DNA of 64,000 nucleotides from Saccostrea echinata. Its lineage: Eukaryota. Under the pieces are notes generated by a model. The model did not search any database, was not told the origin of the DNA, and worked only from the letters and a program-made list of their open reading frames with translations. Shown here piece after piece: positions 28,279 to 51,248 of the stretch (position 1 is its first letter; the number at the start of each line of letters is the position of its first letter). The stretch is taken from positions 7,874,001 to 7,938,000 of the forward strand of contig NW_026889781.1 in assembly GCF_033153115.1 (NCBI RefSeq), read 5' to 3'. Both the position numbers and the translations under genes were made by a program.

Positions 28279-28540
28279 AGTTAGCCTCTCTGCAATTAAC
28301 GTTCTAACAGTACATGCATGCACGCCATCACGATTTCAGTACAACTTCCATATATTTTTCTTTAGTACCTAGGAGAATAAAAATTTCACATTAAATCTGT
28401 GAGAACAACTTCACAAACTCGTCCAGGCAAGGTAAAGTAATATGTTGAAACTTGAATGAACATGAAAAATGATAGAACAGATTACTAAAATGTTTTTGAC
28501 TAAAAATAATACCCTATATTTGTTTGATACATGTAATTTT

Positions 28541-29280
28541 ACAGGTCCAGCACAATCTCTTGATTTAGCTTTATAGCTTGAAAAAGCTATATAGCTTTAA
28601 TAAGCTATTCAAAATAGCTTGATTATGTGCAGTTTTTCAGAAAAATGTTTTTTGTAAGAAATAGACAAAAAGTCACAAGTACTTGACTATTCATATATGT
28701 GCTATGGGCTATCAAAAAAAAAAAACAACCGAAATCAAAGATAGTTCTAACATTGCAGCATTTTAAGCAAAAGATGAATTTCCATTGTTTGAGTAACTGT
28801 ACACTACCTTATGTGCGTTGAGGCGTGGATAAGTATGATTGCTTCTCATTGTACTGAATTATTACCAATCAATTATCTTGTTGACCATAATTGGTCTCTT
28901 TTAAAATTTCAATGAAGAAGTAACTGTATCAATTTGCTTTATATAGCCCCAAAACTTTTAGAACTGAGAGTACAAAGTCTCTAAAGGAGATGCAATTTGA
29001 TGAGTAATTTTTACACGCATTATTTTCAGAAGCGTCTCCACACGAGTGAAAAATTCTCGAGAGGGACGTTAAACAATAAACAAACAAACAAACAAACAGA
29101 AGAGTTTAAGGTTGAATATTATCACTGCACCAAGGTGCGACTTTTTGTTCATGCGGAGAAAATGACATATTTAAGAAAAAAAGTGTGATAAAATAGCTAA
29201 ATCAAGCTATTCTGAATAGCTTAATAAAGCTATATAGCTAAATCAAGCTATAATGCTACATCAAGCTATACATATAGCTA
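28541..29280. mobile_element. Left part of a MITE split by the 13-kb transposon (right TIR remnant at 42382-42408)
   Basis: Left end ACAGGTCCAGCACAATCTCTTGATTTAGCT is the reverse complement of agcTA|[insert]|TAaatcaagagattgtgccggacctgt; subterminal atagct/aagcta repeats; a related fragment lies at ~57497-57663. Confidence 0.75.
29030..29098 (+). mobile_element. 3' tail fragment of the tRNA-SINE family
   Basis: cgtctcc...gagtgaaaaattctcgagagggacgttaaacaataaacaaacaaac matches the reverse complement of 50964-51020. Confidence 0.75.
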
Positions 29281-29694
29281 TAGTCTGTCCCACCAAGCTA
29301 TTGTAACCACTTTTTGCAACATATCTCAAAATATATAAATACCTTGGCCTTCAACTTAGGTCCGATCGATAGATCATTTTTTTTCCAATTTTCCTCCATT
29401 TATCCGAACCCTCGAGTTCAACCGGTGTATTGACACGGCGGCAAATTCAAAGTCTACGGGGATTTAACATTGCCAAAATGGCTGCCACTTCGGCAAGGGA
29501 TCATATATTATTTTTTACTTATTCGTTATTTTCCGTAGCCTTCCGTCAATGACGTCACTGACGTTAAACGCAGCGCACGTTGACGTTATTTACGCATGCG
29601 TTACTGTCGTCAGAAGATATCCGTTTCGTTTTATACTTATATTTATATACATATTTTTTATCCATATACCATTATTATACAAGAAAATTCAAAA

Positions 29695-32600
29695 ATGCCA
29701 AGACAGAAAACGAAGAGCCGGCAAGTAGCAAAGTCATTGAAGGTATTAGCCTCAATACAGAATCATGAAATATCTGTCGACAGTTTTTTATCACTGTCGT
29801 TTGCAACTGTGGCTGAACTATATTCCGTAAAGTCATATAAATTTGAAGCCGTAAAAATCATTAATAATTTTTGGAGGCATTTTTTGTAAAAATCCTGATT
29901 CAATTATCTCAATAGCTGTAACAAAAAAAGTTCACTTTACCTCACGAGAACAAAAATCCCATGAACACAGGGGAAGTCATCGATACAATCACCACACACC
30001 ATACATTTGTATAATCCAATACATTACACTAAACCATATTTTAAGCAGTATATCCGAAGTGAATTGCAGTCCTTTAAAGCACTTTGCACACATAAAAATT
30101 CCAAATTTATGAACAAGTGCAATAATTTTGCCAAGTTTTCAAGCTGTCTGCATAACATTGCGTCAAGAAACGACCTTGCCCTTTGGTATGGGTGACAGGT
30201 CTATTCAGACCCGCATAAATTTTACCCGTCCTATATAAATGTATTGAAAGAAAGAAAAGAAGATTAAATCCAGCAGTTATGATTTTATTCTTGACTACAT
30301 GATATGTACACTTTCCAAGTCATACTTAAATATATATTCAAAAGAACTATTTATGAATATATATCAAAGAATGAATACAGCACATGTATAGATATTTTTT
30401 TGTAAACAAGAAAGATAACTCTTAGATGAAGAAATGTAATTCAATAGTTGCCAAGAGTTATTTCCCACAAATTTTACTGCTAAGCTTCAGTTAAAGAAAA
30501 ATAACAACAAATTAACCAAATGTTTACTTTTTAATGGTATCTCCAAAAATTTTCAGATATGATATTTTAAACAACAACAAGAATGACTTTATTCTTTGAA
30601 AATAGAGAGAAAACATGAATATAGTGATGCCATGAGTTGCAAAACATGCATGTTAGTTAAAATTGAAGTTATTTGTAAATGTCAAGAATATGAGCCTTTC
30701 ACAACTTCCATAAACAAATGACTATCTGATGGATGAGATTTTAATTTTTTTTAATGTACCTATGTCAGAAATCATAAATCAAAATTGTCTCTGTTTTAAA
30801 TGCATGGAAGAAGTTGTGATTGGACAACTGTATGAAATTATAACCGAATAATTAAGAGATCAACAAGAACATGTTTTGAAATCAAAAACAAAAAAGTCCA
30901 TGGGAACAAGTGTTCATTTGCTAAACAGTTAAGGTTTAGGAAATAAGATTTTATGCGAGCAACAGTTACTGATATAGGAATTGTACATTTTTTTCTTGGA
31001 TATATAATTTTCAAAAATTTTTCAGTCATCATGATAAAAAAATAGTTGTGCTAAAGTCGTTGTGTCTCAAATGAACATTTTTCTCTGGAGAATTTTGTTT
31101 CAGATTTCAAGACTGTAAAAGGGTCAATATGGCAGATACATAACTGCAAGGGCTCAAATAATCTCCCATGTTTAATGTGACTGTGACCCAAGGGCACTGA
31201 CTTTGAAATCAGACAATATTACAGTTGAACTTGGTTATTTCGTATATTGATATCTCATATACTATAGATATGTTGAAGTACTTTGGCAGTCCAAATCATC
31301 TTCTTTTATGTTTTTTACCCTGTTTATATTTCGAATCATTGAATATCTGAGTTTAATCTTGGTTCAGTCTAGTTCATAATAATGAGGTTTGACGGTATAC
31401 GAAAGGCATAAAGAAAACTGTTCTTGATAGTGTAAAAGGGGAAGGGGGAGAGAGCGATTATCTGAAAAACTGTTATCTCTTTGAGAAGCTAAAATCATTT
31501 TTCCTTACATAACCCAAAAGCATAGGCAAGCAAGCTATTATGATCAAAGATTATTCATGTAAAACTCTGTTCAGATGACAAAACTTGCCCCCCCCCCCCC
31601 CCGCCTTACCACTGAGGGACAATAACAATAGGTCCATTTGCTCAGCTGCTGCTGATTTTTACGAACTATTCCCTCTTTCTTCACATGAAAATTTGAACCC
31701 CCTAGTGGGGAGGGGTGGGGGTCTTGATTTATGCAGACCTCAATCAACACATGGAAATACTTGAGATCCTGGTACATTTAAAAGGTTATTGAAACTTTAA
31801 TCCAATAAATTACAATGTATATAAAGCTACATGTATGATCCCCTATACTAACCGTCCCCCAATACCCTGGGGCCATGACTAGAACAAATTTTAATGCACT
31901 ACTCCAGGATGCTTGCATTTCAAGATTTACAATCATGACCTTGCTGTTCTTGAAGACTTTGAAGATTTTTTTTTTATATTCTGATGTAAAACTTTGATCC
32001 CCTTTGAAAAACCTTCACTTGTGTATAATTGTGATGAAGATGAAACTCATGTGCAATCATCCTAAGGTAGTGTAGATTTAAGTTTGTTCAAATCATGACC
32101 CCTGGCGGTAGGTTGGGGTCACAATGGACGATCAAAATTTTACATAGGAGTATATAGGAAAAATCTTCTCAAGAACAGCAAAGCCATGATTGGTCATATT
32201 TATATGGAAGCATCATCAGGTAGTGCAGATTCAAATTTGTACGAATCATGACCCTTGGGGGTAAGACAAGGCCACAATGGACGATCAAAGTTTTATATTG
32301 GAGTATATAAGAAAAATCAGCAAAGCCATGATTGGTTATTAACTATTTGGAAGTATCTTAAGGTAGTGTAGATTCATGTGTGTTCAAATCATGACCCCCT
32401 AGGGATAGGGTGGGGCCACAATTGATGAAAGTTATACATAGGAATACATAAGAATTTTTTTTTAAAGTCTCCTTTTCAAGAACAGTACAGCCATGGTTGG
32501 TCATATTATATGGAAGCATCCTCAAATAGTGTAGATTCACATTTGTTCAAATCATGACCCCCAGGGGGAGGGTGCACGTGGGACCATAATGAAAGTTCAA

Positions 32601-35600
32601 ACTTGTAGGGGAAAAAAGTCACAGTTAGTCAAAGAAATATGTAAGCATCTTTAGTAAGTGTAGATTCAATTTTGTTCAAATCACCCTCCCCCCCCCCCCC
32701 CCCCCTCTTTATAGGGGTAGGTTGGGACCACTTATGCATTAAAGCTTTTCAATACTGAACTTTTCCTAGCCACAGTGCTCAGGTGGGTATGTGGCCCATG
32801 GCCTCTTGTTTATCTTGCAAAAAAGATTTTAAATCTTTTCCTATATAAAACTTTGATCTCCTAATCATGATTTGAACAAATATGGATCTACACTATGTCA
32901 GAAACCTTCTATATAAGTTTCATATTATCTGTCCAAGTGGTTGATTGTGGTTCTGAAAAGGAAGATGAAACTGTGAAAAGTTTACAATAAGGTCTAAGAC
33001 AACAAACATGGAGGAATATTGATGAGAAAAGCTCACTTGAATCTTTGGCTCAGGCAATTAAGCTTTAAAAGTTGAAAATTTGAAGAAAAAAAAAAATAAC
33101 AGATGATTACACAGGCAGATGCCAGACACAGGGTGATCAGTCAAGCTCTTAGGTGTGGTAAGAAAAAAGAAAAAAATCTAAAGAAGGAAAAAAACATTAT
33201 TTTTGGTATTTTAATTTCCATTGAAAAATTACTCAGAAAAGGGGCATAACTCATGCTATAATAGTAAATTTTGGTTAAAATCTTGGTGCATTTTTCTCCC
33301 TAAAAAAAATTGAAATTAAATAATTTTTGTTTTATGATATTTATAGATGCAGTTAAACATTTTATACCTAGAAAATATTTAAGTGTATTCTTTTAGAGTA
33401 TATTAAGTTGAGTTTCTTCACCTGATAATAACATTTTAGGGTAAAAGTTATCAGAAAATTGGTCAAAATAAATTTTGTCTCTAAACCTTTACATATAATA
33501 TTTCAAGACTATAAAATAGTCAGAATGGCAGATACATAACTTTGAAATCACACAATATGCAGTTGAACTTGGTTTTCTCAAATACTGATATGATTTTTAT
33601 CCAACTCGGGTATTGCAATTATTTTGAAGTTCATTTTTGCAAGATTGACTGGACTATACATATAACATAAAATGGATGACCATGGGCTGAATAAATTACT
33701 AAAATCAGGTGTCTCAGAACTATTAATTAATTTAACAAAAACATTTTTGTAATCCACAGGTTGTTGACATTCTCAAGAAAATTTACAATTACTTTAACAA
33801 AGAGATGAGAGATGGAAAAGTTAAAAACCTCTCCAATCCTCTAAGGAGGCTTGCAACTGCCACAGGTATTGATTAGTAGATTACAGTAAAACACGCTTAT
33901 AACAGAGTGCCAGGGACAGACAATTTTCCTTTGTTATAAGTGTAATTCCTTATATCCATTAAGTGTTCAATATGTTTTAAAGTCAAGGGGAATGAAAATC
34001 ATTTTGCAATAAGCATCCATTCATTAAAAGCGTGTTTGTTATAAGTGTGTTTAACTGTATCCTACAATAAATCCTATTACATGTACAAAGAAATGTTTTG
34101 ACGAGCAAATTGCAAATTTTTTTCAGGGGGAGGAGGGGGGATTCATTAGATCAGTGCATGGAATTCTTTGATATTGATGGTGAACTGTTAATTAGTTTGA
34201 TGGATACATTGACAATATTCATATTCAAGTACTTTTGTTCTAGAAAACATATATATAATCTTTACAATTCATCCTCTCACATGTAAAGTACATGAATGTT
34301 TTAACATAATTTAGGAATATCTGAAAGGAATTTGAAGACATGGATAATTCCTGATCCTGTTGAGGAAGTGGTGGAGGACCTGCAAGTCCCTCCTGTAGAG
34401 CAGAAGTTCCACTCCAATAAGGGGCTTGATGACTTTGATGAGGACCTGGTGAAAAGGACCATCCATGAGATGCAGTTGAGGGGCGAGTATGTTTCTCTCC
34501 GTCGACTGTCTGGTGTGTTGGTAGAAAGGGGTATCAGGATCACCAAGTCATCACTGGGACGGCTTGTGAAGAAACTTGGATTCAGGTAAGGTACACTAGA
34601 GGCAAACAATTGATTTTAAAAAATTACCTACAATGCACATGATACAACCATTTTATCATTAAATTAATAAATGAAGCATTTTATATTAAAGCAAAAACAA
34701 ATCATGTTAGATAGAGACATTTGCTTGCAGAAAAAAAGAGTTTTTCATTTTTAGCTCACCTCGACGAAGTCAAGATGAGCTTATGCTATACCCCCGGCGT
34801 CAGCGTTAGCGTCGGCGTCCCGGTTAAAGTTTTAGTAGCAAGTCCATTCCCAAGTAACTATAAGCCCTACCTGGACCAAACTTGCATGGATGATGCATCC
34901 AGGGATGGACACTACCACACTTGCTTCGGATGCTGGATCTGACCTAGATTTTCCAGATGAGTGACCAGGTTAAAATTTTTGGAGCAGGTCCATTCCCAAG
35001 TAACTATTGGCCCTACCTGGACCAAACTTGCATGGATGATGCATCTAGGGATGGACACTACCACACTTGCTTCGAATGCTGGATCTGACCTAGATTTTCC
35101 AGATGAGTGAATTTTATCCATATTTTTACCAAATTAGCATGGATGATGTAGCTAGGGATGGTCACTTCCAGACTTGCTTTGGATTCTGAATCTGACCTAC
35201 ATTTTCCACGAGTGACCAGGATAATTTTTTTGGAGTAGCTATATAACATTATGGCCTGTTATGACTAAACTTGCATAGATGGTGCATCTAAGTGAAAACT
35301 TCCAGACTTACTTTGGATGTTGGAACTGACCAAAATTTTCTTGATTAGTAAACAGGATAAACGTTTTTTGAACAGGTCTATTTCCAAGTAACTATAAGTC
35401 GTACTTAAACCAAACTTGCATGGACATTGATCTTGGGATGTACTCTAAATAAAAAAAAATATGACGTGAAATTTGCCTTACTTAAAGATAACATTCGTCG
35501 AGGTGAGCTTCGTAATCTTTGATTACCAATGTTTCAAAATGTCATTCTTTTTTTTTCAGGTTCTACAAGACTGGTTCAAATCGGAGGTACATTGGAGAGC

Positions 35601-36748
35601 GTAATGACATTGTCAGTATGCGCCATACTTACCTGAGGTCCATCCGAAACTTTAGAGAGTTGGGTCGTCCTATTGTATACTTGGACGAGACTTGGTTGAA
35701 CACCAATCATGTAGCGAGGGGAGATTGGGTGGACTGTCCTAGGATATCTACCTCTGCCTTTGAGTCGCATCGTGGAGGTCATGGGCGCTTCGTCCCACCT
35801 GGGAAAGGCTCTCGTCTGATAATCGTGGATTCTGGTTCTTCGGCTGTAGGCATGATCCCGGGATCAAGCCTAGTTTTCGAGTCGAAAACTGGCACTCAAG
35901 ATTATCATGATGAGATGAACTCAGGAAACTTCACGAGGTGGTTCACTGAGCAGTTGCTCCCTAATCTACCGGGTAATTCGGTCATCGTGATGGATAATGC
36001 TTCCTATCACAGTCATCTGGATCCCGAGTCTAAGTGTCCGACATCGTCGGCGCGAAAGGCCGAGATCCAGTCTTGGCTTGATAGAAAGGGTATCCATTAC
36101 ACTCCGGGAATGATTAAGGCCGAATTACTCACATTGGTGAAGCAACATAAGCCTCGTCCAAAGTATGTGATTGACGATTTGGCTTCACAGGCAGGTCACA
36201 CAGTTTTGCGTCTACCTCCTTATCACTGTGAGCTGAATCCCATCGAGCTGGTTTGGGCTGAATTGAAAAGCTTCGTCGCCAGGAGCAATGCCACGTTTAA
36301 GAAAGATAAAGTGATGGAGCTATTCAATCAAGCAAGATCAGCTTACGATGCGGAGAAGTGGAGGAGGGTAGAGAGCCACGTGATAAATGAGGTAGAGACA
36401 AAACTGTGGAAACTTGACGGAGTTCAGGACAACGAGGTCGCTCCGGTGATCGTTGACTTGACAGACTCGGAAGACAGTGACAGTGACTTAGACACAGATT
36501 CTGGTGATGACGAAAATGACGCTGACTCTGACGTGTCCATGAACTCCGTCGAGGAATCTGATGATGAAGTCACTTGCTGCATATGTGGTGACTATAATGC
36601 TCCTGGACGGTCTCGAAAGATTGCCTGGGTGGAATGTGAGTTGTGCGAAAGATGGAGTCACCGCATATGCACCAAGCCCTCTCTAAAGTCAGGTAAGTGC
36701 CTTCGATGTTGGAACAGTTTGTATGGACTGAATCCTCTTTCTTCATGA
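29695..36748 (+). CDS. Intron-containing DD83E transposase with acidic tail and PHD-like finger, ~537 aa; exons 29695-29742 (less certain), 33760-33865, 34315-34585, 35560-36748
   Basis: HTH-like N-terminus (IYNYF...LATATGISERNLK; TKSSLGRLVKKLGF), catalytic YLDETW / MDNASYH / LNPIE with 83 residues between D and E, C-terminal C4HC3 finger; in-phase GT-AG junctions, no stops. Confidence 0.88.
32040..32812 (+). mobile_element. Cg170-like Helentron fragment in transposase intron 1 (further inverted fragments at ~31600-32000 and ~32820-33065)
   Basis: Same ggaagcatcctcaggtagtgtagattcaagtttgttcaaatcatgacccc units and 3' CTCAGGTG...GGCCCATGG.CTCTTGTT end as 4910-5922. Confidence 0.75.
33884..34057. 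mobile_element. Tigger/pogo-like MITE in transposase intron 2
   Basis: TA|CAGTAAAACACGCTTATAAC ... GTTATAAGTGTGTTTAACTG|TA. Confidence 0.7.
34750..35520 (+). mobile_element. HINE-type element with ~133-bp tandem units filling most of transposase intron 3
   Basis: Sub-TIRs AGCTCACCTCGACGAA / TTCGTCGAGGTGAGCT, ggcgtc repeats, 4-5 tandem units, 3' GTAATC...GATTAC hairpin. Confidence 0.75.
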
Positions 36749-38483
36749 GCCTTTCCTCTGATGATTGGAGAACTGTTCCTCTTTAAAGGTAGAAGAAAGA
36801 TTATTAATCATTGATGCATGTATCAGTTGGTGATTATAATATATGTGATTATATTTTGAAATACCCATATTTGAGAATAGTAAGCTATTACAATAAACCA
36901 TCGTTAAGTGACTTCTGAAACGTTAAGTTATTGATGCAAGGCAAAAGATATTTTGTGATGTCTGAAATTATAAATTATTCGAGTGGATGAAAGATAAGAA
37001 AAGTACTTTATTTAAATTTGAATACTTTGTTTTCATACTTGAAAAAGCTGCAAACAAATTTCTTCAACCAGTCTTCCTCACTGTCAAATCTGTGTCAGAT
37101 ATCTAAAATTAAAATGTTTTAAGAAAATATTTGCTTTCAATGATTAATACAGCATAAGAAATTACCTATACTGAATATTTTGGAACTATAGATACATGTT
37201 AGTGTGACATAAAGGCCCAATCAAAAATTAGAAAGTCCAAATAAGTAAAATAAAACATGAATATTTTATAATCCTTTGTTTTTCTTGAATTAGCTCTACA
37301 GATACAGCAGAAGGAAATTAAGGTATAGAAATACAGTGAATATTGAATTGAAACTTGTCAGTATCTAAGGGCAATAACCTATGTGAATAGGTCAATCACC
37401 ATAAAACTGAAACTACTAGTAGATTAAACATTAGCTCAGTACCTACAAACATAAGAAAAAAAAGACTAGAAAACTAACTATGACAGAACAACAATGACAA
37501 AATGACAGACATAAAGGGTAATAGTAAGCACTATCTGCCCCGTTCATTTCATGGTGGATGGGGGCAAAAAAGTCTTTTTATTTCATGTTATTTGGTTTAG
37601 AAATGTTTACAGTTAACATTCACTGGTGAATCTATGATACATGCATTGTTCAATGATTAATTATCTTTCAAAAGGTGGGACTGTGTGTAACTAATCTTTT
37701 TTCTGCATCTGGTCTATGTATTGGAGAGTTTATATTACATATCTGAAATCATTCTTATGATCCATGGGTGAAATTTTTATTCAACCAGCTATCACTGAAA
37801 GTAATGAAGATCATTATCATGATTATTGGTTTGAATTCCTATTTGCGGATCCATGCAAACTTAAATATACACTATATGAGAATGCTTGTATGTGAATTAC
37901 AATATTTGCCCCCGTGCTGTTTCATAGATGATTTCAAACTTCTTTTTTTTTAAATATACATTTATTATACAGACTCATAATAAATTTCATTCTATATATT
38001 GTTCGTGAAGTGCAGAAGGAAAACAGGACATAGATAAAGAAATGTTCATGTACAGAGTATGTGTGATTTAATATGAATACAAACAGATCTTCCTCTTGTT
38101 TATAGAACAAATCAGAATTTTATGGAATATGATTCAATGAGAACAGAACAACTGTATTTTTATAGTATCATCCCTTAAAAATGTTACATGTTTTTATTAT
38201 ACCTCTACTGATTTTTTTTCCCCTATATAACATTAGATTGTTAGATGTGACTAATTCTCTAGAAATCGTTAAGAATGGACTTATCCCCATGCATTTGTCA
38301 AGTGAGCTAATCCCTGCTTTGAGAGCCAATTCCCAGTTATCTGTAATCTTCTAGATTTTACTTTTATATTTGTATGATATGTGAATGGACTAGTCCCCGT
38401 GCATTAGTTCAGTTAGCTAATCCCTGTTTTGAAATCATGCCATCTGAATCATCTAAATTTTACGTTTGTATTGGTGTAATAAA

Positions 38484-38629
38484 ACAGTTAAAAGTATATC
38501 ATTGAGGGAGTTAGCAAGATTCCAGTTCCCCTCGACCAAGACTATTTCCCTCGGCTTCGCCTCGGGAAATAGTCCCGGCCTTGGGGAACTAGAATCTTGC
38601 TAACTCCCTCAATGATATACTTTAACTGT
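38484..38629. mobile_element. 146-bp palindromic MITE with GGCTTCGCC loop
   Basis: acagttaaaagtatatcattgagggagttagcaagattc...gaatcttgctaactccctcaatgatatactttaactgt forms a near-perfect foldback. Confidence 0.75.
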
Positions 38630-41047
38630 ATACTGTAGCTCTATCTTGGGGTTGAAATTGAATAGTGCACATGTAAGCATATACTGCATGATTAGTTACA
38701 CACAATGCCCTCTACCGAACCAACAAACCTGACTTTTGATGAGTGAAGCTGCTTCCCCTCCTCTGTATCTCCTGCATGTTAAATTTTCACAGGTCAGCAT
38801 TTAGTCTCAGTTTCTTATTGTGATCCACTTCTTCTCTACAATTGGGACTTGCATGATTAATATTTTTTTCATTTCTTATTATACTTATACTTTGTAAAAT
38901 GCAATCAACTGTAAAAAATACTGTACAAGTTTCAGTGGTTTTAATTCATTTGCAATTTTGATATTGAAACATTGTTTATTCAAGCATAAATATACATAAA
39001 TCCTACTGTGGTTCCATATTACTGTGATAAAATCTGCTCTGATATACATGTATGCTGTTATCTAACTTATGTACATAATCAATTGCAAGAAAAGTTGTAC
39101 AAATTTCATTGGTTTTAATTAATTCATTTGTAATTTTTTTCTTAATATAGTTTATTCAACTAATTAAAACAAAAATATATAAAATTCCTACTGTACTTTC
39201 ATTTTTGCATCATAAATTTACTGTGATAAAATCTGTTGTGATATATTTATTATATGTTATTGTTAAATTGTAATTATTTATTTTAAGCATATGAATTATG
39301 ATATCAACAAATTAACTAAAATGGTACTGTAATAATTAATTGATTAAATGTAATTGATTAGTTTTTCCTGTCCTTGTATACATTTTATACACTGTGATAA
39401 AAATTTTGCTGTGTTCTGCATTCTAAATCCACATGAATTTTCAATCTCTTTGCTTCTTTGTGATATAAGTACTTGGCTGTTAAACATTTTTTTCACTTAT
39501 TTACCTACTATGATTATCTGCAATTAATTTATTCAATTTGTATGAAAATAGCCTTATTCTTACACTTTAACTGTAAATGCTATAGTTCCATGCAGTGACA
39601 TGAATTTGTGATGTTTGAATTTTAAGATGTTTTCACACAGAGACATATAATTGCTATTTACAGGTAATGCATATTTGCACCAAATTCTTATACAGTTTTC
39701 TGTAACTGACTGTCTGTTTGCATTATGGTTTTATCATGTAATACTTAAGGTTCTTTCTACCAAACATTGAATGTGTACAAAGGTGGTGTGAAATGCACTA
39801 CAACAAAGCTAGTCATAAAAAAATAAACAATATATTATAACTAGCTGTTACGGTTTGTAGTCTAGCATAGCAGTAATTTACTGCATATGATTTATATACT
39901 ATAATTGTAACAAATCTAGACTACATTAACAAAATATGGTGAATTATATACATATGTATACCTACATGGGGCCATGAATGGCATATTACAGTGGTTATAT
40001 TCAGTACACATTTCATTGTTGGTTTACATGATATGGAGTCACTGGCACGACAGAGATGTCTGTAAACTTCCGTCTTTGTGACATTACCTAAATGCTTACA
40101 TACAGGGCAAGATATTTAATTTTTTTAATTATCTCATTTCTACGTTTGATATACCAGTATAACAAATAGTTTCTGTGTGTAAAATATTTAAGAAGAATTT
40201 CAATTTTTGGCTGAACTTTTAAGTCCTGAGCTTTTTAGATGTATTCTTAAGTTATTATCATGATTATTGTAAAAAAAAAAAAAAAAATCAGGAAATACAC
40301 AATATGAACTTTACTGCAAATTAAAATGGATTGTTAAATTAATACACCTTTAAGTAACTACATGCTCATGCTGTACGTGTAACTAAATATTATATGTATG
40401 CTATTTTGTTTAATTGTGAAATAAATTATTTGCTGTTATTCCACACCATGTTTTGTTTTTTTTTCAGATATATGAAATTTTATTATTGAAATCCTTAGAC
40501 AATATGCTATACATTACTCAGTAATGTGGTGCCCAGTGATTGACATGTTACAAAAGCTATGGGTCGAATTAGCAAAGAATCAATATCCCTTTCAAACAAG
40601 GAAAAGTTTAACCGTGAGACCTATAGCTATCACCGTCAAAGGTTTTCTGTATTACATCAATAAATTATTACTGTCCTGTGTGATATTAATCCCATTAAAA
40701 GACAATTACAGTGAGGAAATGAGGAATGAAATATTATAACAATTGAGTATCTGATGAAATTTTGACATGACTATTCCATTTACATGTGTCTATGTGTTCC
40801 AAAATTTTCTATATGAAAAAATATGAATTTCCTGTCATATATAATGTAGTGGAATATTGAGAATGTCTGTCTTAACCGCTTTGAGGTTGTAACAACAGTA
40901 ACCACATTTGTTTACATTTTGTTTACCATTGGGCATGATCTTGCCAATCTGGAAATGAAAATCCTCATCAAAAGTTACAAATCTTAATATTTAAAATTAA
41001 AATGAATAGTGTACACATTTACGTACATTGAAGGCTACAGATTTTAG

Positions 41048-41080
41048 CAGGGACCTATATACTATATATATAGGTCCCTG
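41048..41080. mobile_element. 33-bp mini-element: 14-bp TIRs with 7-bp TSD
   Basis: ATTTTAG|CAGGGACCTATATA-CTATA-TATATAGGTCCCTG|ATTTTAG. Confidence 0.7.
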
Positions 41081-41390
41081 ATTTTAGTAAACAAGGTCTG
41101 CATCTTTTGTGGAATCAATATGTCATAAATGGTAGGCTGGGATACAGAAAACTTCTATATATTATATATAGCAGTAAAAGTTTTTTTTTCTTTCTAATAT
41201 ATGACAGACCATTCATCCAGGTGGATTTTTTTCTTACAAATCTAGTGTTAAATGATTTTTAAAATCAATTTATTTGCTCTTTGTAACATAACTACACAAT
41301 AAATATAATACCTCTATATAGAGATTTTGGGATTAAAGAAGTTCTCAGAGATTTTTGAGTGCCAAAGATTATATTATGGTAATATATCAA

Positions 41391-41428
<38 letters not shown>

Positions 41429-44400
41429 AGAATTGATTCTTCAGGGTGTTTTGTACTTCATAATTATTATTATTATTATTATTATATATCTTTGTTTTTC
41501 TTTACTGTTGAATTGTATTTGTACAAAGTGAAAGTAGACATATTTCACACATGGTTTATGTAATGCAAAATTTGCCAGCTTCTATCTATATAATTCAAAA
41601 TCAGCCAGCGTTGTGATTATTTGTAAAAAAAAAAAAAAAAAAAAGGTATTTTTTTTAATGCTTTCTTTTCCTGTGAAGTTCTATGTTTTGATATCAGATT
41701 TTAGTTGACCGTTTATGTTTTTTTTCAAGGACGAATGTATTGATCAGCTGTGTATTGTTTAGCCTTTAGAAGCATAGAGTATTTTTTTCTTTCTTTTCAT
41801 TGCACTTACCAGCTTCTGATGTGTGCATTTTATCATACTTTTAGAACTGATAACACTTCTTTCTGGATGTCTGCTTTGCAATAAGAAAAACTTACGTTTT
41901 ATAGATAGGAAGGTGTAAACACATCTCTTGCATCTTGTTGACATCCGTTCTAGGAACAGTGTACGTATCCACTTGTACTGTATTGATTCGGTCTGCTTTC
42001 CCATTGTTCGTTATAAACCCGTTAAATATACTTGAATATGAAAAAATACTTATATATTTTTAGAAAAACACATTGAATTATTTTCTCCGAATTTTTAATT
42101 TTTTTTGGTAATTTAATTTGAAAAGAACGACTACTCCATCGATAAACTGGTTTCCCGCCCCGTGATCTTGACGATAATGGACGAGTTTACCATGTTAAAT
42201 CCCCGTAGACTTTGAATTTGCCGCCGTGTCAATACACCGGTTGAACTCAAGGGTTCGAATAAATGGAGGAAAATTGGAAAAAAAATGATCTATCTATCGG
42301 ACCTAAGTTGAAGGCCAAGGTATTTATATATTTTAAGATATGTTGCAAAAAGTGGTTACAATAGCTTGGTGGGACAGACTATAAATCAAGAGATTGTGCC
42401 GGACCTGTTGAAAGACAGGTAACTTTCTCCATCTTCGGCCTCTCGCAACCACCGTTCTAACAGTACTCATGCATGCATGACATCAGAGACATCATCCTTA
42501 TCTTTTTCTATAAAAATAATTAAAAAAAAATCCCATTAAATCTGCAAGATCAACTTCATGAATTCGTCAAGGCAAGTTGTAAAAATGAAAAGTCCTAACT
42601 TGAATGAACATTTAATATGATAAGGCAGATTATAAAAAAATGTATTTAACTAAATTTGATACCCTATAGGAATTGTTAACTTCAATACTTACCCTTTGGC
42701 CTTCGCTTTCCGATTTCAAGACTGGAAATAAACATAGCTTGATAATATTAAAACCAGAAGTGGGAAACAATTAAATTCCGAAAAAATAGCTGTAAAGCGA
42801 TGCTGACAGAACCCGGGCACTATCGATCTTAACTCCCTTCTTCGGACTACTTATATTTAACCACAAAAAAACCTTGGCCAATGAGAAACCAGCCAATAAA
42901 CAATACAACAAGGAATAAAAAGTTAAAAACAAAACAAAAACTGAGAAAAATCTTTAGTTTTACTAAATGATTACCTCTTTGTTATACTACATGCACTACG
43001 GGTTCATATCACATATAATACATGTATTAAAGTTCATAAAGGAAACTGTCTTTTAGATTTTTTATGTGCCTAAAAAATAAAATGCCTCATATAAAATATT
43101 AGGATTTTACCAAAGGTGCTTGAGGATTCGACCCCCTCCCGATATAGACCCAGCGGGCCTTTCTGAATAATGGACAGAAGGATGAAACGTTCGCTCAACT
43201 AGGACCTTAGGTCATCAGCTCAGTTCTCAATTATCAAAACTGTTTACACCGCGACAAAATGCAGTGTATTGCAACCGTAAAGTGAAAATAGAATAAACCG
43301 CACTACTGTGAAGCCTTTACAGTGTAAAACAACAAACAGTAAATCTATTTTTGCCAAAGGAATAATCATTTGATATTAGGAAAGATACGGGGGAGGGGGG
43401 CATTGACTGCAATAGGCCCCCTATTATAAAATATAAGTTATAAAGCAATGGATTACGTTGGGTTACCTGTGGTCTCCTTAATGATATTATTATTCCATGT
43501 AAGGCAACAGTATCTATTTGACAAGTACCTAACCTCTGATCTCCTCAGTAGTATTTCAGAGTAGACGACCTCCTAGCTGTCTCTGCATTCGCAGATCTAA
43601 CAGGCAGGGGGAGGAGGAACATTGTAGGTCTTACCCCCTACCCCGCTTGGACTCTTCAGTGATCCTTAAAGATAATGGAATAATTATTTGGTAATAAATT
43701 GTATTAACTGTCCTTTGGTCTCCCTTATGAGGTCATACCGACCTTATCAGTTTAACACTTTAGTAAACCTCTGGTTATTATTAATTTTACAGAATAGATG
43801 TACGCCCTGTCTTGCGAGGATGGGGGCTGGAGTTCACCTCCCCCCTTTCCCTGGAATTTACACTTATCAAATTTATAAACGAATCAAAACTATATTTTCC
43901 AAAATAATAAACTTAAAAAACATAGGTCCATTGTCAATTGCTTCTGGGATACATATAATGTATATGAAGAAAAAGTTGTCTAATATCATCCCCCATCCAA
44001 TTACATAAATTTAGAAAATTTATTTGGAGAAATTGTAAACTTGTTTGCTTGTAAAAAAAATCAGGGTCTCATTTTTTGTTTGGAGTGGATTTGAAAAATA
44101 ATTCTAATAATGAAGGAGAATTTAAAAATTCCCATATTTATAAATGTTTACGAGATTAAACTTTAGTAATTCGTTCTATTGAGTCGAAGTCCCGAGTTGT
44201 CAACGGCTTTGTCTTCTATGACCTCTCCAATTGTCGACATCTTTTCCAGTTATTTCTCTTTGCTAGACGTTCATACAGAGAAGATTGACCGTCCATAACC
44301 AAAGAAATATATTCGATGTCAAAATTTCAACCGGCCATATTGTGTATTTTATTTATTTAGCGTAAAAATCCATTCAATATATGTTTTCTTACGATAAGCT

Positions 44401-50466: not shown

Positions 50467-50963
50467 TTAAGAATATGAGACGAACAAACTTTTTACATGT
50501 GCGCAAGTGCACACGTGGCAGACAATGGATGCGATGTGTATCTAACAAGATTTTATTAATTTTAAAACTATCTGTTACCCTCATTTAATGATGGTTTTGT
50601 CAATCAATACACAATAAAAGTGACTTATTTAGAAACTTTATCATTGAATCTTTGCTTTATATTGCAATTCTCTAAAGTGAGAAAATCTTTCATACAGTGT
50701 GCTTGCAGTTCTGGATAGCAATTATTAATTACATGTAAGCCTTAAAAATATGCATGTTTTTTTCTCGTTAGTGTCTTGTTTTCTTTTTGTTTTTATTGCT
50801 TGTTTATTTTTTTAAATTTGGTTGCTTATTTGTTTAGTTTTTGTGAAGATACTTTTAATAATCTTTTATAGTATGTACCTCAAAGTAGCCTCTTACATTG
50901 ATTTTTGAGATAAGTAAAGAAGATTCGTCATCTCTCTTGGGAGTCCTTACCTTGGTAAATTGT

Positions 50964-51248
50964 TTTTTGTTTGTTTATTGTTTAACGTCCCTCTCTAGAA
51001 TTTTTCACTCATATAGAGACGCCACCACTTGCCGGTGGAGAGCTGCAAATTTTTTACCTATACTCGGCACTTAGGGCAATTGAGCAGTGAGGGATCTTTT
51101 TCGTGCCAACACCTACTGCGACATGGGACCTCGGTTTATACGGTCTCATCCGAAGGACCGGTCCCACAGTGGGATTCGAACCTGCGACGTAAGGATCAAC
51201 TCCTTACTCTGACTCTAGAGCGAACGCTCTAACCACTGCGCCACACGG
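50964..51248 (-). mobile_element. Full-length tRNA-derived SINE
   Basis: Minus strand: A box TGGCGCAGTGG, B box GGTTCGAATCC, CAAA-type tail; 12-bp TSD TTGGTAA(A/T)TTGT at 50952-50963 and 51249-51260. Confidence 0.85.

What the first reader, a model, noticed from the sequence alone, without database searches (positions are those of the whole stretch)
29281..42381. Giant (13.1 kb) Sailor-type DD83E transposon with intact TIRs and a spliced transposase gene
Seen: 190-bp TIRs with about 4 mismatches, a TA TSD that exactly restores the host MITE sequence, and an uninterrupted transposase split by three GT-AG introns (about 4.0 kb, 0.45 kb and 0.97 kb) containing other TEs. Known: IS630-Tc1-mariner elements are typically a few kb long, and a D-E spacing of about 82 residues defines the Sailor group. 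Inference: a recently mobile, host-gene-like element whose introns absorb secondary insertions without killing the ORF.
Basis: partly seen in the sequence, partly recalled or inferred. Interest (0 to 1): 0.8.

Follow-up and report, generated by a model that had tools for sequence, protein, structure and literature searches.

The report
Giant intron-bearing Sailor transposon in oyster
This is a 13-kb cut-and-paste jumping gene of the Sailor group in a rock oyster, several times larger than its described relatives because its enzyme gene is split by introns and followed by long non-coding DNA.

Summary
Window 29281-42381 is a 13,101-bp element in Saccostrea echinata. It has 190-nt inverted ends with 4 mismatches in 192 compared positions, and TA(TA) on both flanks. 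It sits inside a MITE whose end is restored when the element is removed. It carries a four-exon IS630-Tc1-mariner transposase with a DD83E triad and the three motifs published for Sailor.

Exon borders rest on comparison, not on RNA. A diverged subfamily B keeps all four reading frames and all GT..AG sites (dN/dS 0.13-0.23). Oyster gene models are collinear across introns 2 and 3. The single reads call showed none of the three junctions among the 15 of 279 joints listed, so splicing is inferred.

The size is a family trait. B copies measure about 11.7-12.9 kb and are 99.7-99.9% identical. Most non-coding DNA matches only family copies, and nested repeats add about 3-4 kb.

About 5-kb non-autonomous partners share the ends. 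Two empty-site comparisons favour a TA duplication over the published TATA. The C-terminal PHD-like finger recurs in 19 of 120 relatives.

Verdict: new variant of a known kind. The scan noted this family before, at two other places in this genome.

The parts
29279..29280 (.). Left copy of the TA target-site duplication. Together with the element's first two bases it reads TATA.
   Evidence: Empty-site comparisons favour TA over TATA.
29281..29470 (+). Left terminal inverted repeat, 190 nt
   Evidence: 98% complementary. (4 mismatches in 192); conserved blocks shared with subfamily B and with the non-autonomous copies.
29471..29694 (+). 5' subterminal region upstream of the start codon, with three TGACGT (CRE-like) motifs at 29550, 29559 and 29581. 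Inferred promoter / 5'UTR.
   Evidence: sequence; two adjacent TGACGT motifs are kept in the A, B and non-autonomous left ends. The promoter role is inference.
29695..29742 (+). Exon 1, 16 codons starting at ATG, donor GT at 29743
   Evidence: In subfamily B the ATG, the frame (one-codon deletion) and the GT are kept, and by my count from the alignment most substitutions are synonymous. B exon 2 has no ATG, so an upstream start is needed. No RNA support. The NCBI model for the sister copy uses a different first exon.
29743..33759 (+). Intron 1, 4017 nt. The first roughly 1.7 kb matches family copies only. About 31450-33740 is an A-lineage block with high-copy repeats, including a tandem array of 129-163-nt units (start-to-start spacing) at 32049-32703.
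   Evidence: Depth peaks (bins 31850-33049).
33760..33865 (+). Exon 2, 106 nt, first helix-turn-helix
   Evidence: Oyster and mussel proteins are collinear across the junction. An in-frame stop at 33733-33735 lies upstream of the acceptor (read).
33866..34314 (+). Intron 2, 449 nt, containing a 136-bp piece (33902-34037) that one DNA-like contig of run X1 skips
   Evidence: joint 33901>34038.
34315..34585 (+). Exon 3, 271 nt, second helix-turn-helix, ending ...KKLGF(R)
   Evidence: dN/dS 0.23 against B.
34586..35559 (+). Intron 3, 974 nt. Of this, 34752-35534 is a nested repeat with 107-146-nt tandem units (start-to-start spacing).
   Evidence: absent from L047 and L050.. (depth peak and loose ends at 35534).
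35560..36748 (+). Exon 4: DDE catalytic domain (D42, D145, E229 in exon numbering), acidic linker, C4HC3 PHD-like finger, stop TGA at 36746-36748
36749..42191 (+). 3' non-coding region, 5.4 kb. AATAAA at 36892-36897. Nested roughly 440-bp high-copy palindromic repeat at 38192-38634. An island at about 39980-40100 is 98-100% identical to subfamily B. No conserved reading frame.
42192..42381 (-). Right terminal inverted repeat, 190 nt
42382..42383 (.). Right copy of the TA target-site duplication
28528..29278 (.). Left part of the host MITE that was interrupted. Its right part is 42384-42421.
   Evidence: pair I9. (1496 first-look candidates of this MITE in the genome).

Best explanation
Window 29281-42381 is one full-length copy of an autonomous cut-and-paste DNA transposon of the Sailor (DD82E-type) branch of IS630-Tc1-mariner, in the oyster Saccostrea echinata. 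Inferred mechanism follows.

- A promoter in the left subterminal region drives a pre-mRNA.
- Three GT-AG introns are removed, giving a transposase of about 537 residues.
- The transposase has two N-terminal helix-turn-helix units (exons 1-3), an RNase-H-like DDE domain with a helical insertion between the second D and E, an acidic linker and a C-terminal PHD-like zinc finger (all exon 4).
- The enzyme binds the 190-nt inverted ends, excises the whole 13 kb and inserts it at a TA.
- It also moves a family of about 5-kb non-autonomous elements that share only the ends.

The large size is inherited. Long introns and a 5.4-kb non-coding 3' region are common to both subfamilies. Later TE insertions land in that non-coding DNA and leave the four exons intact.

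Shown here: the ends, flanks, target restoration, exon frames, purifying selection, fold, copies and subfamilies. Inferred: transcription, splicing, the catalytic competence of this particular copy, and any chromatin reading by the PHD finger.
For: Ends and target.

Family membership: Pfam DDE_3 at E 1.9e-11. DD83E with the Sailor motifs. Among the 120 best relatives, 90 align as D-D-E. Counted to the NPIE glutamate, their spacing is 81-83 in 88 of the 90 (which counted to the HCE glutamate, plus 5).

Fold: the best PDB matches are Mos1, SETMAR/Metnase and Sleeping Beauty catalytic domains, E about 1e-7, TM 0.63-0.65 on the target. The model has mean pLDDT 79.6.

Gene structure: Crassostrea, Saccostrea and Mytilus proteins are collinear over exons 2/3/4 with contiguous protein coordinates. 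This includes the NCBI model of the sister copy (525 aa). Subfamily B keeps all four frames open and all GT/AG sites. dN/dS against B is 0.13 for exon 4, 0.23 for exon 3 and 0.19 for exon 2.

Mobility of the large form: the sister copy has a different left flank but shares the nested blocks. Four B copies are 99.7-99.9% identical over 4.2 kb, and the left end of one B copy and the right end of another are 100% complementary over 193 nt.

Partners: 8 of 8 fetched elements of 4.4-5.2 kb share only 29279-29571 and 41879-42384 with the window, and all have TATA flanks.
Against: - No spliced read was seen. One search listed only 15 of 279 joints, all inside repeats, and none at 29742/33760, 33865/34315 or 34585/35560.
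- The RNA runs come from another organism and lie 90-95% from the window. They carry B-like letters at 9 of 12 listed exon-3 positions.
- No indexed RNA run holds half or more of the exon-4 words.
- Exon 1 rests on one A/B comparison. NCBI's model of the sister copy starts instead in a nested repeat.
- The nearest relative of this copy is 2.6% diverged, and no right end was found for it within 3.3 kb. The window copy is therefore the only A-type copy shown here with both ends.
- The A-type non-autonomous elements are 89-95% alike (one pair at 99.8% is the same insertion in duplicated flanks), so the A burst is not very recent.
- No phylogeny with named Sailor references was made.
Confidence: 0.85

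Rival explanations
1. The window copy is a dead relic. The family is real, but only subfamily B is active now, and this A-type copy is neither expressed nor able to move.
For: B copies are 99.7-99.9% alike and have complementary ends that match perfectly. The window is 97.4% identical to its nearest relative. A-type non-autonomous copies are 89-95% alike. No RNA run holds the window's exon 4 well. The RNA reads laid on exon 3 carry B-like letters.
Against: All four exons are open with intact splice signals. The ends are 98% complementary, and the ends of the non-autonomous copies are 96-99% identical to the window's. The TA flanks are intact and the target is cleanly restored.
Confidence: 0.4
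2. A composite accident: two ends of an unrelated non-autonomous element happen to flank a transposase gene that is not theirs.
For: The 5-kb elements share only the terminal 290 and 500 bp with the window copy.
Against: Subfamily B has the same order of ends, exons and 3' region, and its ends have diverged together with the gene (85% against 94%). The sister copy is collinear over 12.5 kb. The ends start GT next to TATA, as described for Sailor.
Confidence: 0.04
3. A domesticated, host-gene-like transposase, as proposed for the intron-bearing TLEWI genes of bivalves, and no longer a transposon.
For: It has an intron-exon structure, purifying selection and a chromatin-type PHD-like finger. NCBI annotates copies as ordinary 'uncharacterized protein' loci.
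Against: It is multi-copy, at different sites, with inverted ends and target duplications. It has non-autonomous partners. Degenerate copies with stops and frameshifts exist beside intact ones. A domesticated gene would be single-copy and syntenic.
Confidence: 0.03

Closest known systems
Sailor (DD82E) superfamily of IS630-Tc1-mariner (Shi et al. 2021, PMC8533490; I read the abstract, found passages and Table 1)
   Same: DD83E spacing, which lies within the published DD78-111E range and is reported as frequent in Mollusca. The motifs I/VVYLDET, VIIMDNA and HCELNPIEL. Ends starting GT next to TATA. Relatives in molluscs and arthropods. One of the paper's founding references is a 376-aa Crassostrea gigas RepBase transposase, which is exactly the length of the window's exon-4 ORF counted from its first Met.
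   Different: - Published total length is 1.38-6.98 kb, and 2.22-2.47 kb in molluscs. This element is 13.1 kb, and subfamily B is 11.7-12.9 kb.
[quoted passage not shown] Here there are four exons, and the ends lie 5.4-6.1 kb from exon 4.
- The main text of the paper has no occurrence of 'PHD' or 'zinc', and 'intron' occurs only in its reference list.
- The paper calls the TSD TATA, while two empty sites here favour TA.
TLEWI, the Tc1-like elements with spliceosomal introns in bivalves (Puzakov et al., bioRxiv 10.1101/656579; I read the abstract and section 10)
   Same: An ITm transposase gene split by 2-5 introns in pteriomorph bivalves. Lengths reach 11.46 kb, mostly because of non-coding DNA.
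   Different: TLEWI is DD36E, low-copy, lacks TIRs and TSDs, and is proposed to be domesticated. This element is DD83E, with 190-nt ends, target duplications, near-identical copies and non-autonomous partners.
Mos1 / Sleeping Beauty / SETMAR catalytic domains (solved Tc1/mariner transposases)
   Same: RNase-H-like DDE fold. These are the top Foldseek matches. TA target.
   Different: The D-E spacer is 83 residues rather than 34. The extra residues form a confidently modelled helical sub-domain (helices 166-175, 186-195 and 203-210, pLDDT about 96). There is also an extra acidic linker and a PHD-like finger.
Recombinases with PHD-type fingers (RAG2 PHD, piggyBac cysteine-rich domain). These are recalled; the search listing shows only piggyBac-type cases.
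   Same: A cross-brace zinc finger appended to a DDE recombination system.
   Different: A different superfamily. Here the finger is fused to a Tc1/mariner-type enzyme. Its ligand, histone tail or DNA, is untested.

Membership tests
Sailor (DD82E) superfamily | A long spacer between the second D and E: DD82E typical, DD78-111E allowed, DD83E frequent in Mollusca | tested here: met
   D145 to E229 in exon-4 numbering gives 83 residues. E229 is invariant in the 43-sequence alignment.
Sailor (DD82E) superfamily | The motifs I/VVYLDET, VIIMDNA and HCELNPIEL around the triad (PMC8533490 section 4.2) | tested here: met
   The window has IVYLDET, VIVMDNA and HCELNPIEL.
Sailor (DD82E) superfamily | TATA target-site duplication | tested here: inconclusive
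   TATA is seen at 18 of 18 ends of 9 complete elements, plus the sister's left end and two B ends. However, 2 of 2 empty-site comparisons fit a TA duplication with ends that begin with TA.
Sailor (DD82E) superfamily | TIRs usually start with GT or CC | tested here: met
   GTCTGTCC follows the TATA. If the TSD is TA, the end begins with TA instead.
Sailor (DD82E) superfamily | Monophyly with named Sailor references in a DDE-domain tree | not tested
   No named reference sequences were available, and the paper's supplements are closed. Indirect support: the 120 best relatives are DD81-83E proteins and include Callosobruchus, a genus with a described Sailor.
IS630-Tc1-mariner | RNase-H-like DDE_3 catalytic fold, paired helix-turn-helix N-terminus, TA target | tested here: met
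   Pfam DDE_3 at 1.9e-11. Foldseek top hits are Mos1, SB and SETMAR. HTH matches are weak, below the cut-offs. TA target.
TLEWI (DD36E intron-bearing Tc1-like) | DD36E signature and no TIRs or TSDs | tested here: not met
   The element is DD83E with 190-nt TIRs and a TSD. TLEWI definition from 10.1101/656579.
PHD finger (C-terminal tail) | C4HC3 spacing and a Pfam PF00628 match | tested here: inconclusive
   The C4HC3 pattern is present and recurs in 19 of 120 relatives. The tail alone scores 23.0 bits against a cut-off of 24 (E 7.9e-5). Most of the 18 weak PDB hits are PHD fingers, the best at E 0.01. The model has two short strands and a helix, pLDDT 58-83.

The most novel reading that the evidence does not exclude
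Autonomous Sailor elements of bivalves may really be 11-13-kb, four-exon, host-gene-like transposons that are active now. The short mollusc 'Sailor' entries in print (2.2-2.5 kb, 338-432 aa, including the 376-aa C. gigas reference) would then be exon-4-only views of such elements. The published TATA duplication would be a TA duplication plus TA-starting ends. The conserved C-terminal PHD finger, which keeps both tryptophans aligned with those of methyl-lysine-reading PHD fingers (the alignments are; their role is recalled), would tether the transposase to H3K4-methylated chromatin. That would make it the first chromatin-reader fusion in a Tc1/mariner-type enzyme.
Probability: 0.3. Interest if true: 0.7.

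Novelty: new variant of a known kind. Interest (0 to 1): 0.52.

Why it matters
Transposition of Tc1/mariner-type elements is known to fall steeply with length (recalled, for example for Sleeping Beauty). A family whose 11.7-13-kb members are 99.7-99.9% identical at several loci suggests an enzyme that tolerates very long cargo. That is of interest for transposon biology and as a lead for gene-delivery tools.

The case also shows how a DNA transposon can adopt a host-like, multi-intron gene structure and still keep its ends and its mobility. The intron-bearing TLEWI elements of bivalves were read as domesticated genes partly because no ends were found, so such cases may deserve a wider search for distant ends.

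Finally, it indicates that current mollusc Sailor annotations may be truncated, because pipelines that look within 2 kb of the ORF cannot see ends about 6 kb away. The PHD-like tail offers a testable route to chromatin-targeted integration.

Tried and rejected
- RNA evidence. The output lists only the 15 best-supported of 279 joints, all within nested repeats, so the three introns stay untested. Run X1 behaves like DNA of the same species: its contigs run through intron-exon borders with 0-2 differences. Runs X21 and X22 are RNA of another organism.
- A second gene in the 5.4-kb 3' region or in intron 1. Stop-to-stop frames of 35 aa or more (57 and 56 of them) were compared with subfamily B by tblastn. 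The hits fall in several frames and on both strands over the same DNA, with stops, so they reflect nucleotide conservation and not coding conservation. Rejected.
- An RNA in the island at about 39980-40100 that is 98-100% conserved. The fold z-score is 0.70 and there are no Rfam matches across the whole element. The island remains unexplained.
- DD78E. My first count used the wrong glutamate. It was corrected after the alignment.
- The idea that the size is mainly nested TEs. Rejected: apart from about 31450-33740, 33902-34037, 34752-35534, 38192-38634 and a short piece at 31220-31398, the non-coding DNA matches only family copies.
- Literature. Searches. One search, requiring five terms together, found 0 papers. 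I found no paper describing a PHD finger on a Tc1/mariner or Sailor transposase (one search lists piggyBac-type cases only), and no paper describing an intron-bearing Sailor. Supplements were not opened, and those of PMC8533490 (element lists and sequences) could bear on both points.

Full report
**What is there.** The window is G000:C32:7874001-7938000 of a 923-Mb assembly. The assembly is Saccostrea echinata: NCBI proteins of that species lie on contigs of exactly the lengths of C36, C32 and C33.

- The repeat finder reports one long inverted pair, 29279-29470 / 42192-42383, 192 nt and 98% complementary. I count 4 mismatches.
- The outermost letters read TATA|GTCTGTCC...GGACAGAC|TATA.
- A 40-nt inverted repeat, 28528-28567 / 42382-42421, brackets the whole element and belongs to a MITE with 1496 first-look candidates in the genome.
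- Uninterrupted copies of that MITE end in TAGC-TA-AATCAAGAG. All 20 of 20 occurrences in the sequence I held have a single TA.

**The gene.**

- The only long ORF, 35519-36748, matches Pfam DDE_3 (E 1.9e-11) and, weakly, PHD.
- Read with the proposed borders, the exons are 29695-29742, 33760-33865, 34315-34585 and 35560-36748. Donors are GT and acceptors AG throughout.
- The lengths sum to 1614 nt, which is 537 codons plus TGA. Every search, alignment and fold used them apart.
- An in-frame stop at 33733-33735 and the lack of an ATG before the acceptor show that exon 2 cannot start translation on its own border.

**Evidence for the introns.**

- Proteins of Crassostrea angulata, C. gigas, Saccostrea cucullata, S. 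echinata and Mytilus edulis align to exons 2, 3 and 4 with contiguous protein coordinates across both junctions. For P0003 these are aa 2-24, 23-113 and 112-476.
- One of these is NCBI's 525-aa model of the sister copy (P0125).
- A diverged subfamily B (L057, L058) keeps all four frames open: 75%, 60%, 86.5% and 96.5% amino-acid identity for exons 1-4. It also keeps GT and AG at every border.
- dN/dS between the window and B is 0.13 for exon 4, 0.23 for exon 3 and 0.19 for exon 2. Over the same comparison, the intron pieces that still align are 66-94% identical and much of the introns does not align at all.
- Exon 1 is the weakest part. In B its ATG and GT are kept, the only indel is one codon, and by my count from the alignment eight of eleven substitutions are synonymous. 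B exon 2 has no methionine, so an upstream start is required.
- Against exon 1: NCBI's model of the sister copy begins with four residues encoded inside a nested high-copy repeat in intron 1. In the window that site is not followed by GT.

**RNA.**

- No indexed RNA run holds half or more of the exon-4 words. The best share is 0.36.
- The single reads call laid two raw RNA runs of another organism, one RNA contig set and one probable DNA set on 29650-35649.
- Most RNA reads are 90-95% alike. They cover exon 3 (about 4-22 per bin and strand direction in runs X21/X22) and the start of exon 4 (about 36-68). They leave 34050-34249 at 0 and 35250-35449 at about 2-4.
- At 9 of 12 listed exon-3 positions they carry the subfamily-B letter. 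A B-like transposase is therefore transcribed in a related oyster.
- The table shows only 15 of 279 joints, all in repeats, so it neither shows nor excludes the three junctions. Splicing therefore remains inferred.

**Which family.**

- In a 121-sequence alignment of the 120 best relatives plus the window's exon 4, 90 of the 121 rows align as D-D-E.
- The invariant glutamate is the E of NPIE (E229). This gives 83 residues after the second D in the window. After the +5 correction it gives 81-83 in 88 of the 90 rows.
- PMC8533490 (abstract, found passages, Table 1) defines Sailor by DD82E. It allows DD78-111E, with DD83E frequent in Mollusca. It gives the motifs I/VVYLDET, VIIMDNA and HCELNPIEL, TATA duplications, and ends that start GT or CC. 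The window has IVYLDET, VIVMDNA and HCELNPIEL.
- The AlphaFold model of the exon-4 product (mean pLDDT 79.6) finds Mos1, SETMAR and Sleeping Beauty catalytic domains first. The extra D-E residues form three confident helices.
- I made no tree with named Sailor references, so clade membership is inferred from signature, motifs and nearest relatives.
- The paper's founding C. gigas reference is 376 aa. This is the exact length of the window's exon-4 ORF from its first Met, and of several exon-4-only models in the same 90% cluster. That is a lead that the mollusc entries are truncated, not a proof.

**TA or TATA.**

- All 18 ends of 9 complete elements show TATA, as do the sister's left end and two B ends.
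- The host MITE has TA at the site, 20 of 20.
- The repeat that hosts element L038 reads caaatt-TT-gacc in 3 of 4 empty paralogues (the fourth, in the window, is more diverged), while L038 has caaatt-TATA[element]TATA-gacc.
- Both comparisons are length-neutral under a TA duplication with TA-starting ends, and need two extra bases under TATA. Two sites are few, so I score the published TATA feature as inconclusive.

**Size is a family trait.**

- The TIR query found 381 first-look candidates. All 40 scored hits are full-length and 96-100% identical.
- Eight pairs lie 4.4-5.2 kb apart. Those elements share only 29279-29571 and 41879-42384 with the window and have no ORF above 117 aa in the one I listed. 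Seven pairwise comparisons with L031 give 89-95% identity. They are non-autonomous partners.
- Exon 4 has 9 full-length matches at 95-100%.
- The sister copy on C33 is collinear from its left end to window position 41975, 97.4% identical in substitutions over 12,501 aligned bases. It has its own flank and an extra 743 bp in intron 2. It contains the same nested blocks, so those blocks predate the copying. I did not find its right end within 3.3 kb.
- Subfamily B ends are 85% identical to the window's. B shares, in the same order, pieces of intron 1, all exons, and 3' pieces at 37618-37898, 38679-39369, 39707-40220, 40403-40508 and 41974-42384.
- Four B copies are 99.7-99.9% identical over 4.2 kb.
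- The distance from the left subterminal region to exon 4 is about 5.14 kb in three B copies and 6.37 kb in the C36 copy. That puts B at about 11.7 kb and the C36 copy at about 12.9 kb. Two earlier notes of this scan on other DNA of this genome record 11,662 and 12,902 letters.

**What fills the non-coding DNA.**

- The 3' 5.3 kb matches only family copies, except for a roughly 440-bp palindromic high-copy repeat at 38192-38634.
- The first 2.4 kb after the left TIR also matches only family copies, except for 31220-31398.
- High-copy nested material lies at about 31850-33050, within an A-specific block at about 31450-33740. It also lies at 33902-34037 and 34752-35534.
- Nested TEs therefore add roughly 3-4 kb. 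The ancestral element was already about 10 kb.
- I found no conserved reading frame outside the four exons.

**The tail.**

- The last 69 residues score 23.0 bits on Pfam PHD against a cut-off of 24 (E 7.9e-5).
- Most of the 18 weak PDB hits are PHD fingers: ALFIN-like 3 at E 0.01, SHPRH, KDM5A, KDM5B, Pygopus.
- A C4HC3 pattern at the C-terminus occurs in 19 of 120 relatives. Those with names are bivalves and a limpet, and none of the named arthropod hits has it.
- Both tryptophans that align with those of the ALFIN-like and KDM5A fingers are kept. Their cage role is recalled, not tested here.

The element is a new variant of a known kind. It is a Sailor-type transposon that is about twice the published maximum length. 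It has a multi-intron gene, like the TIR-less TLEWI genes of bivalves (10.1101/656579). It also has intact ends, partners and near-identical sister elements.

Noticed in passing
window 39980-40100 (compared with L058): A non-coding island of about 100-130 nt in the 3' region is 98-100% identical between subfamilies A and B, while its surroundings are 46-90%. It has no RNA-fold signal (z 0.70) and no Rfam match. It could be a cis element or a conversion patch.
   Followed up: partly
window 35560-36898 compared with 33760-34585: Synonymous divergence between subfamilies A and B is uneven: dS 0.13 in exon 4, 0.42 in exon 3 and about 1.5 in exon 2. This suggests recombination or gene conversion between subfamilies over exon 4.
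   Followed up: no
window 29550-29586: Three TGACGT (CRE-like) motifs lie just inside the left end, upstream of the ATG. Two adjacent TGACGT motifs are conserved in the A, B and non-autonomous left ends but are absent from the right ends.
   Followed up: no
window 36035-36230 (exon-4 residues about 160-210): The Sailor-specific insertion between the second D and E folds as three confident helices. In mussel relatives it gives weak HeH/LEM-type Pfam hits, E 0.003-0.02 and below cut-off.
   Followed up: partly
window 32049-32703 and 34819-35433: The nested repeats carry tandem arrays with start-to-start spacings of 129-163 nt (32049-32703) and 107-146 nt (34819-35433). They are extremely abundant in both DNA-like and RNA runs, with bin depth up to about 1,100 per strand direction in RNA reads and tens of thousands in contig word depth. 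NCBI's model of the sister copy takes its start codon from one such unit.
   Followed up: partly
L032 (C58:6998962-7003806) and L035 (C16:27452025-27456874): Two non-autonomous copies are 99.8% identical and have identical flanks in opposite orientation. This is the same insertion present twice, either a segmental duplication or an assembly duplicate, and not two transpositions.
   Followed up: no
G000:C50:2689390-2695931 and C50:3060220-3066736: Two loci on C50 match the window's intron 1 and 3' region at 78-93% but gave no exon-4 match. They are probably internally deleted derivatives of the large element.
   Followed up: no
window 50959-51147: This is a copy of the dispersed repeat into which non-autonomous element L038 inserted elsewhere. 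I used it as an empty-site paralogue.
   Followed up: partly
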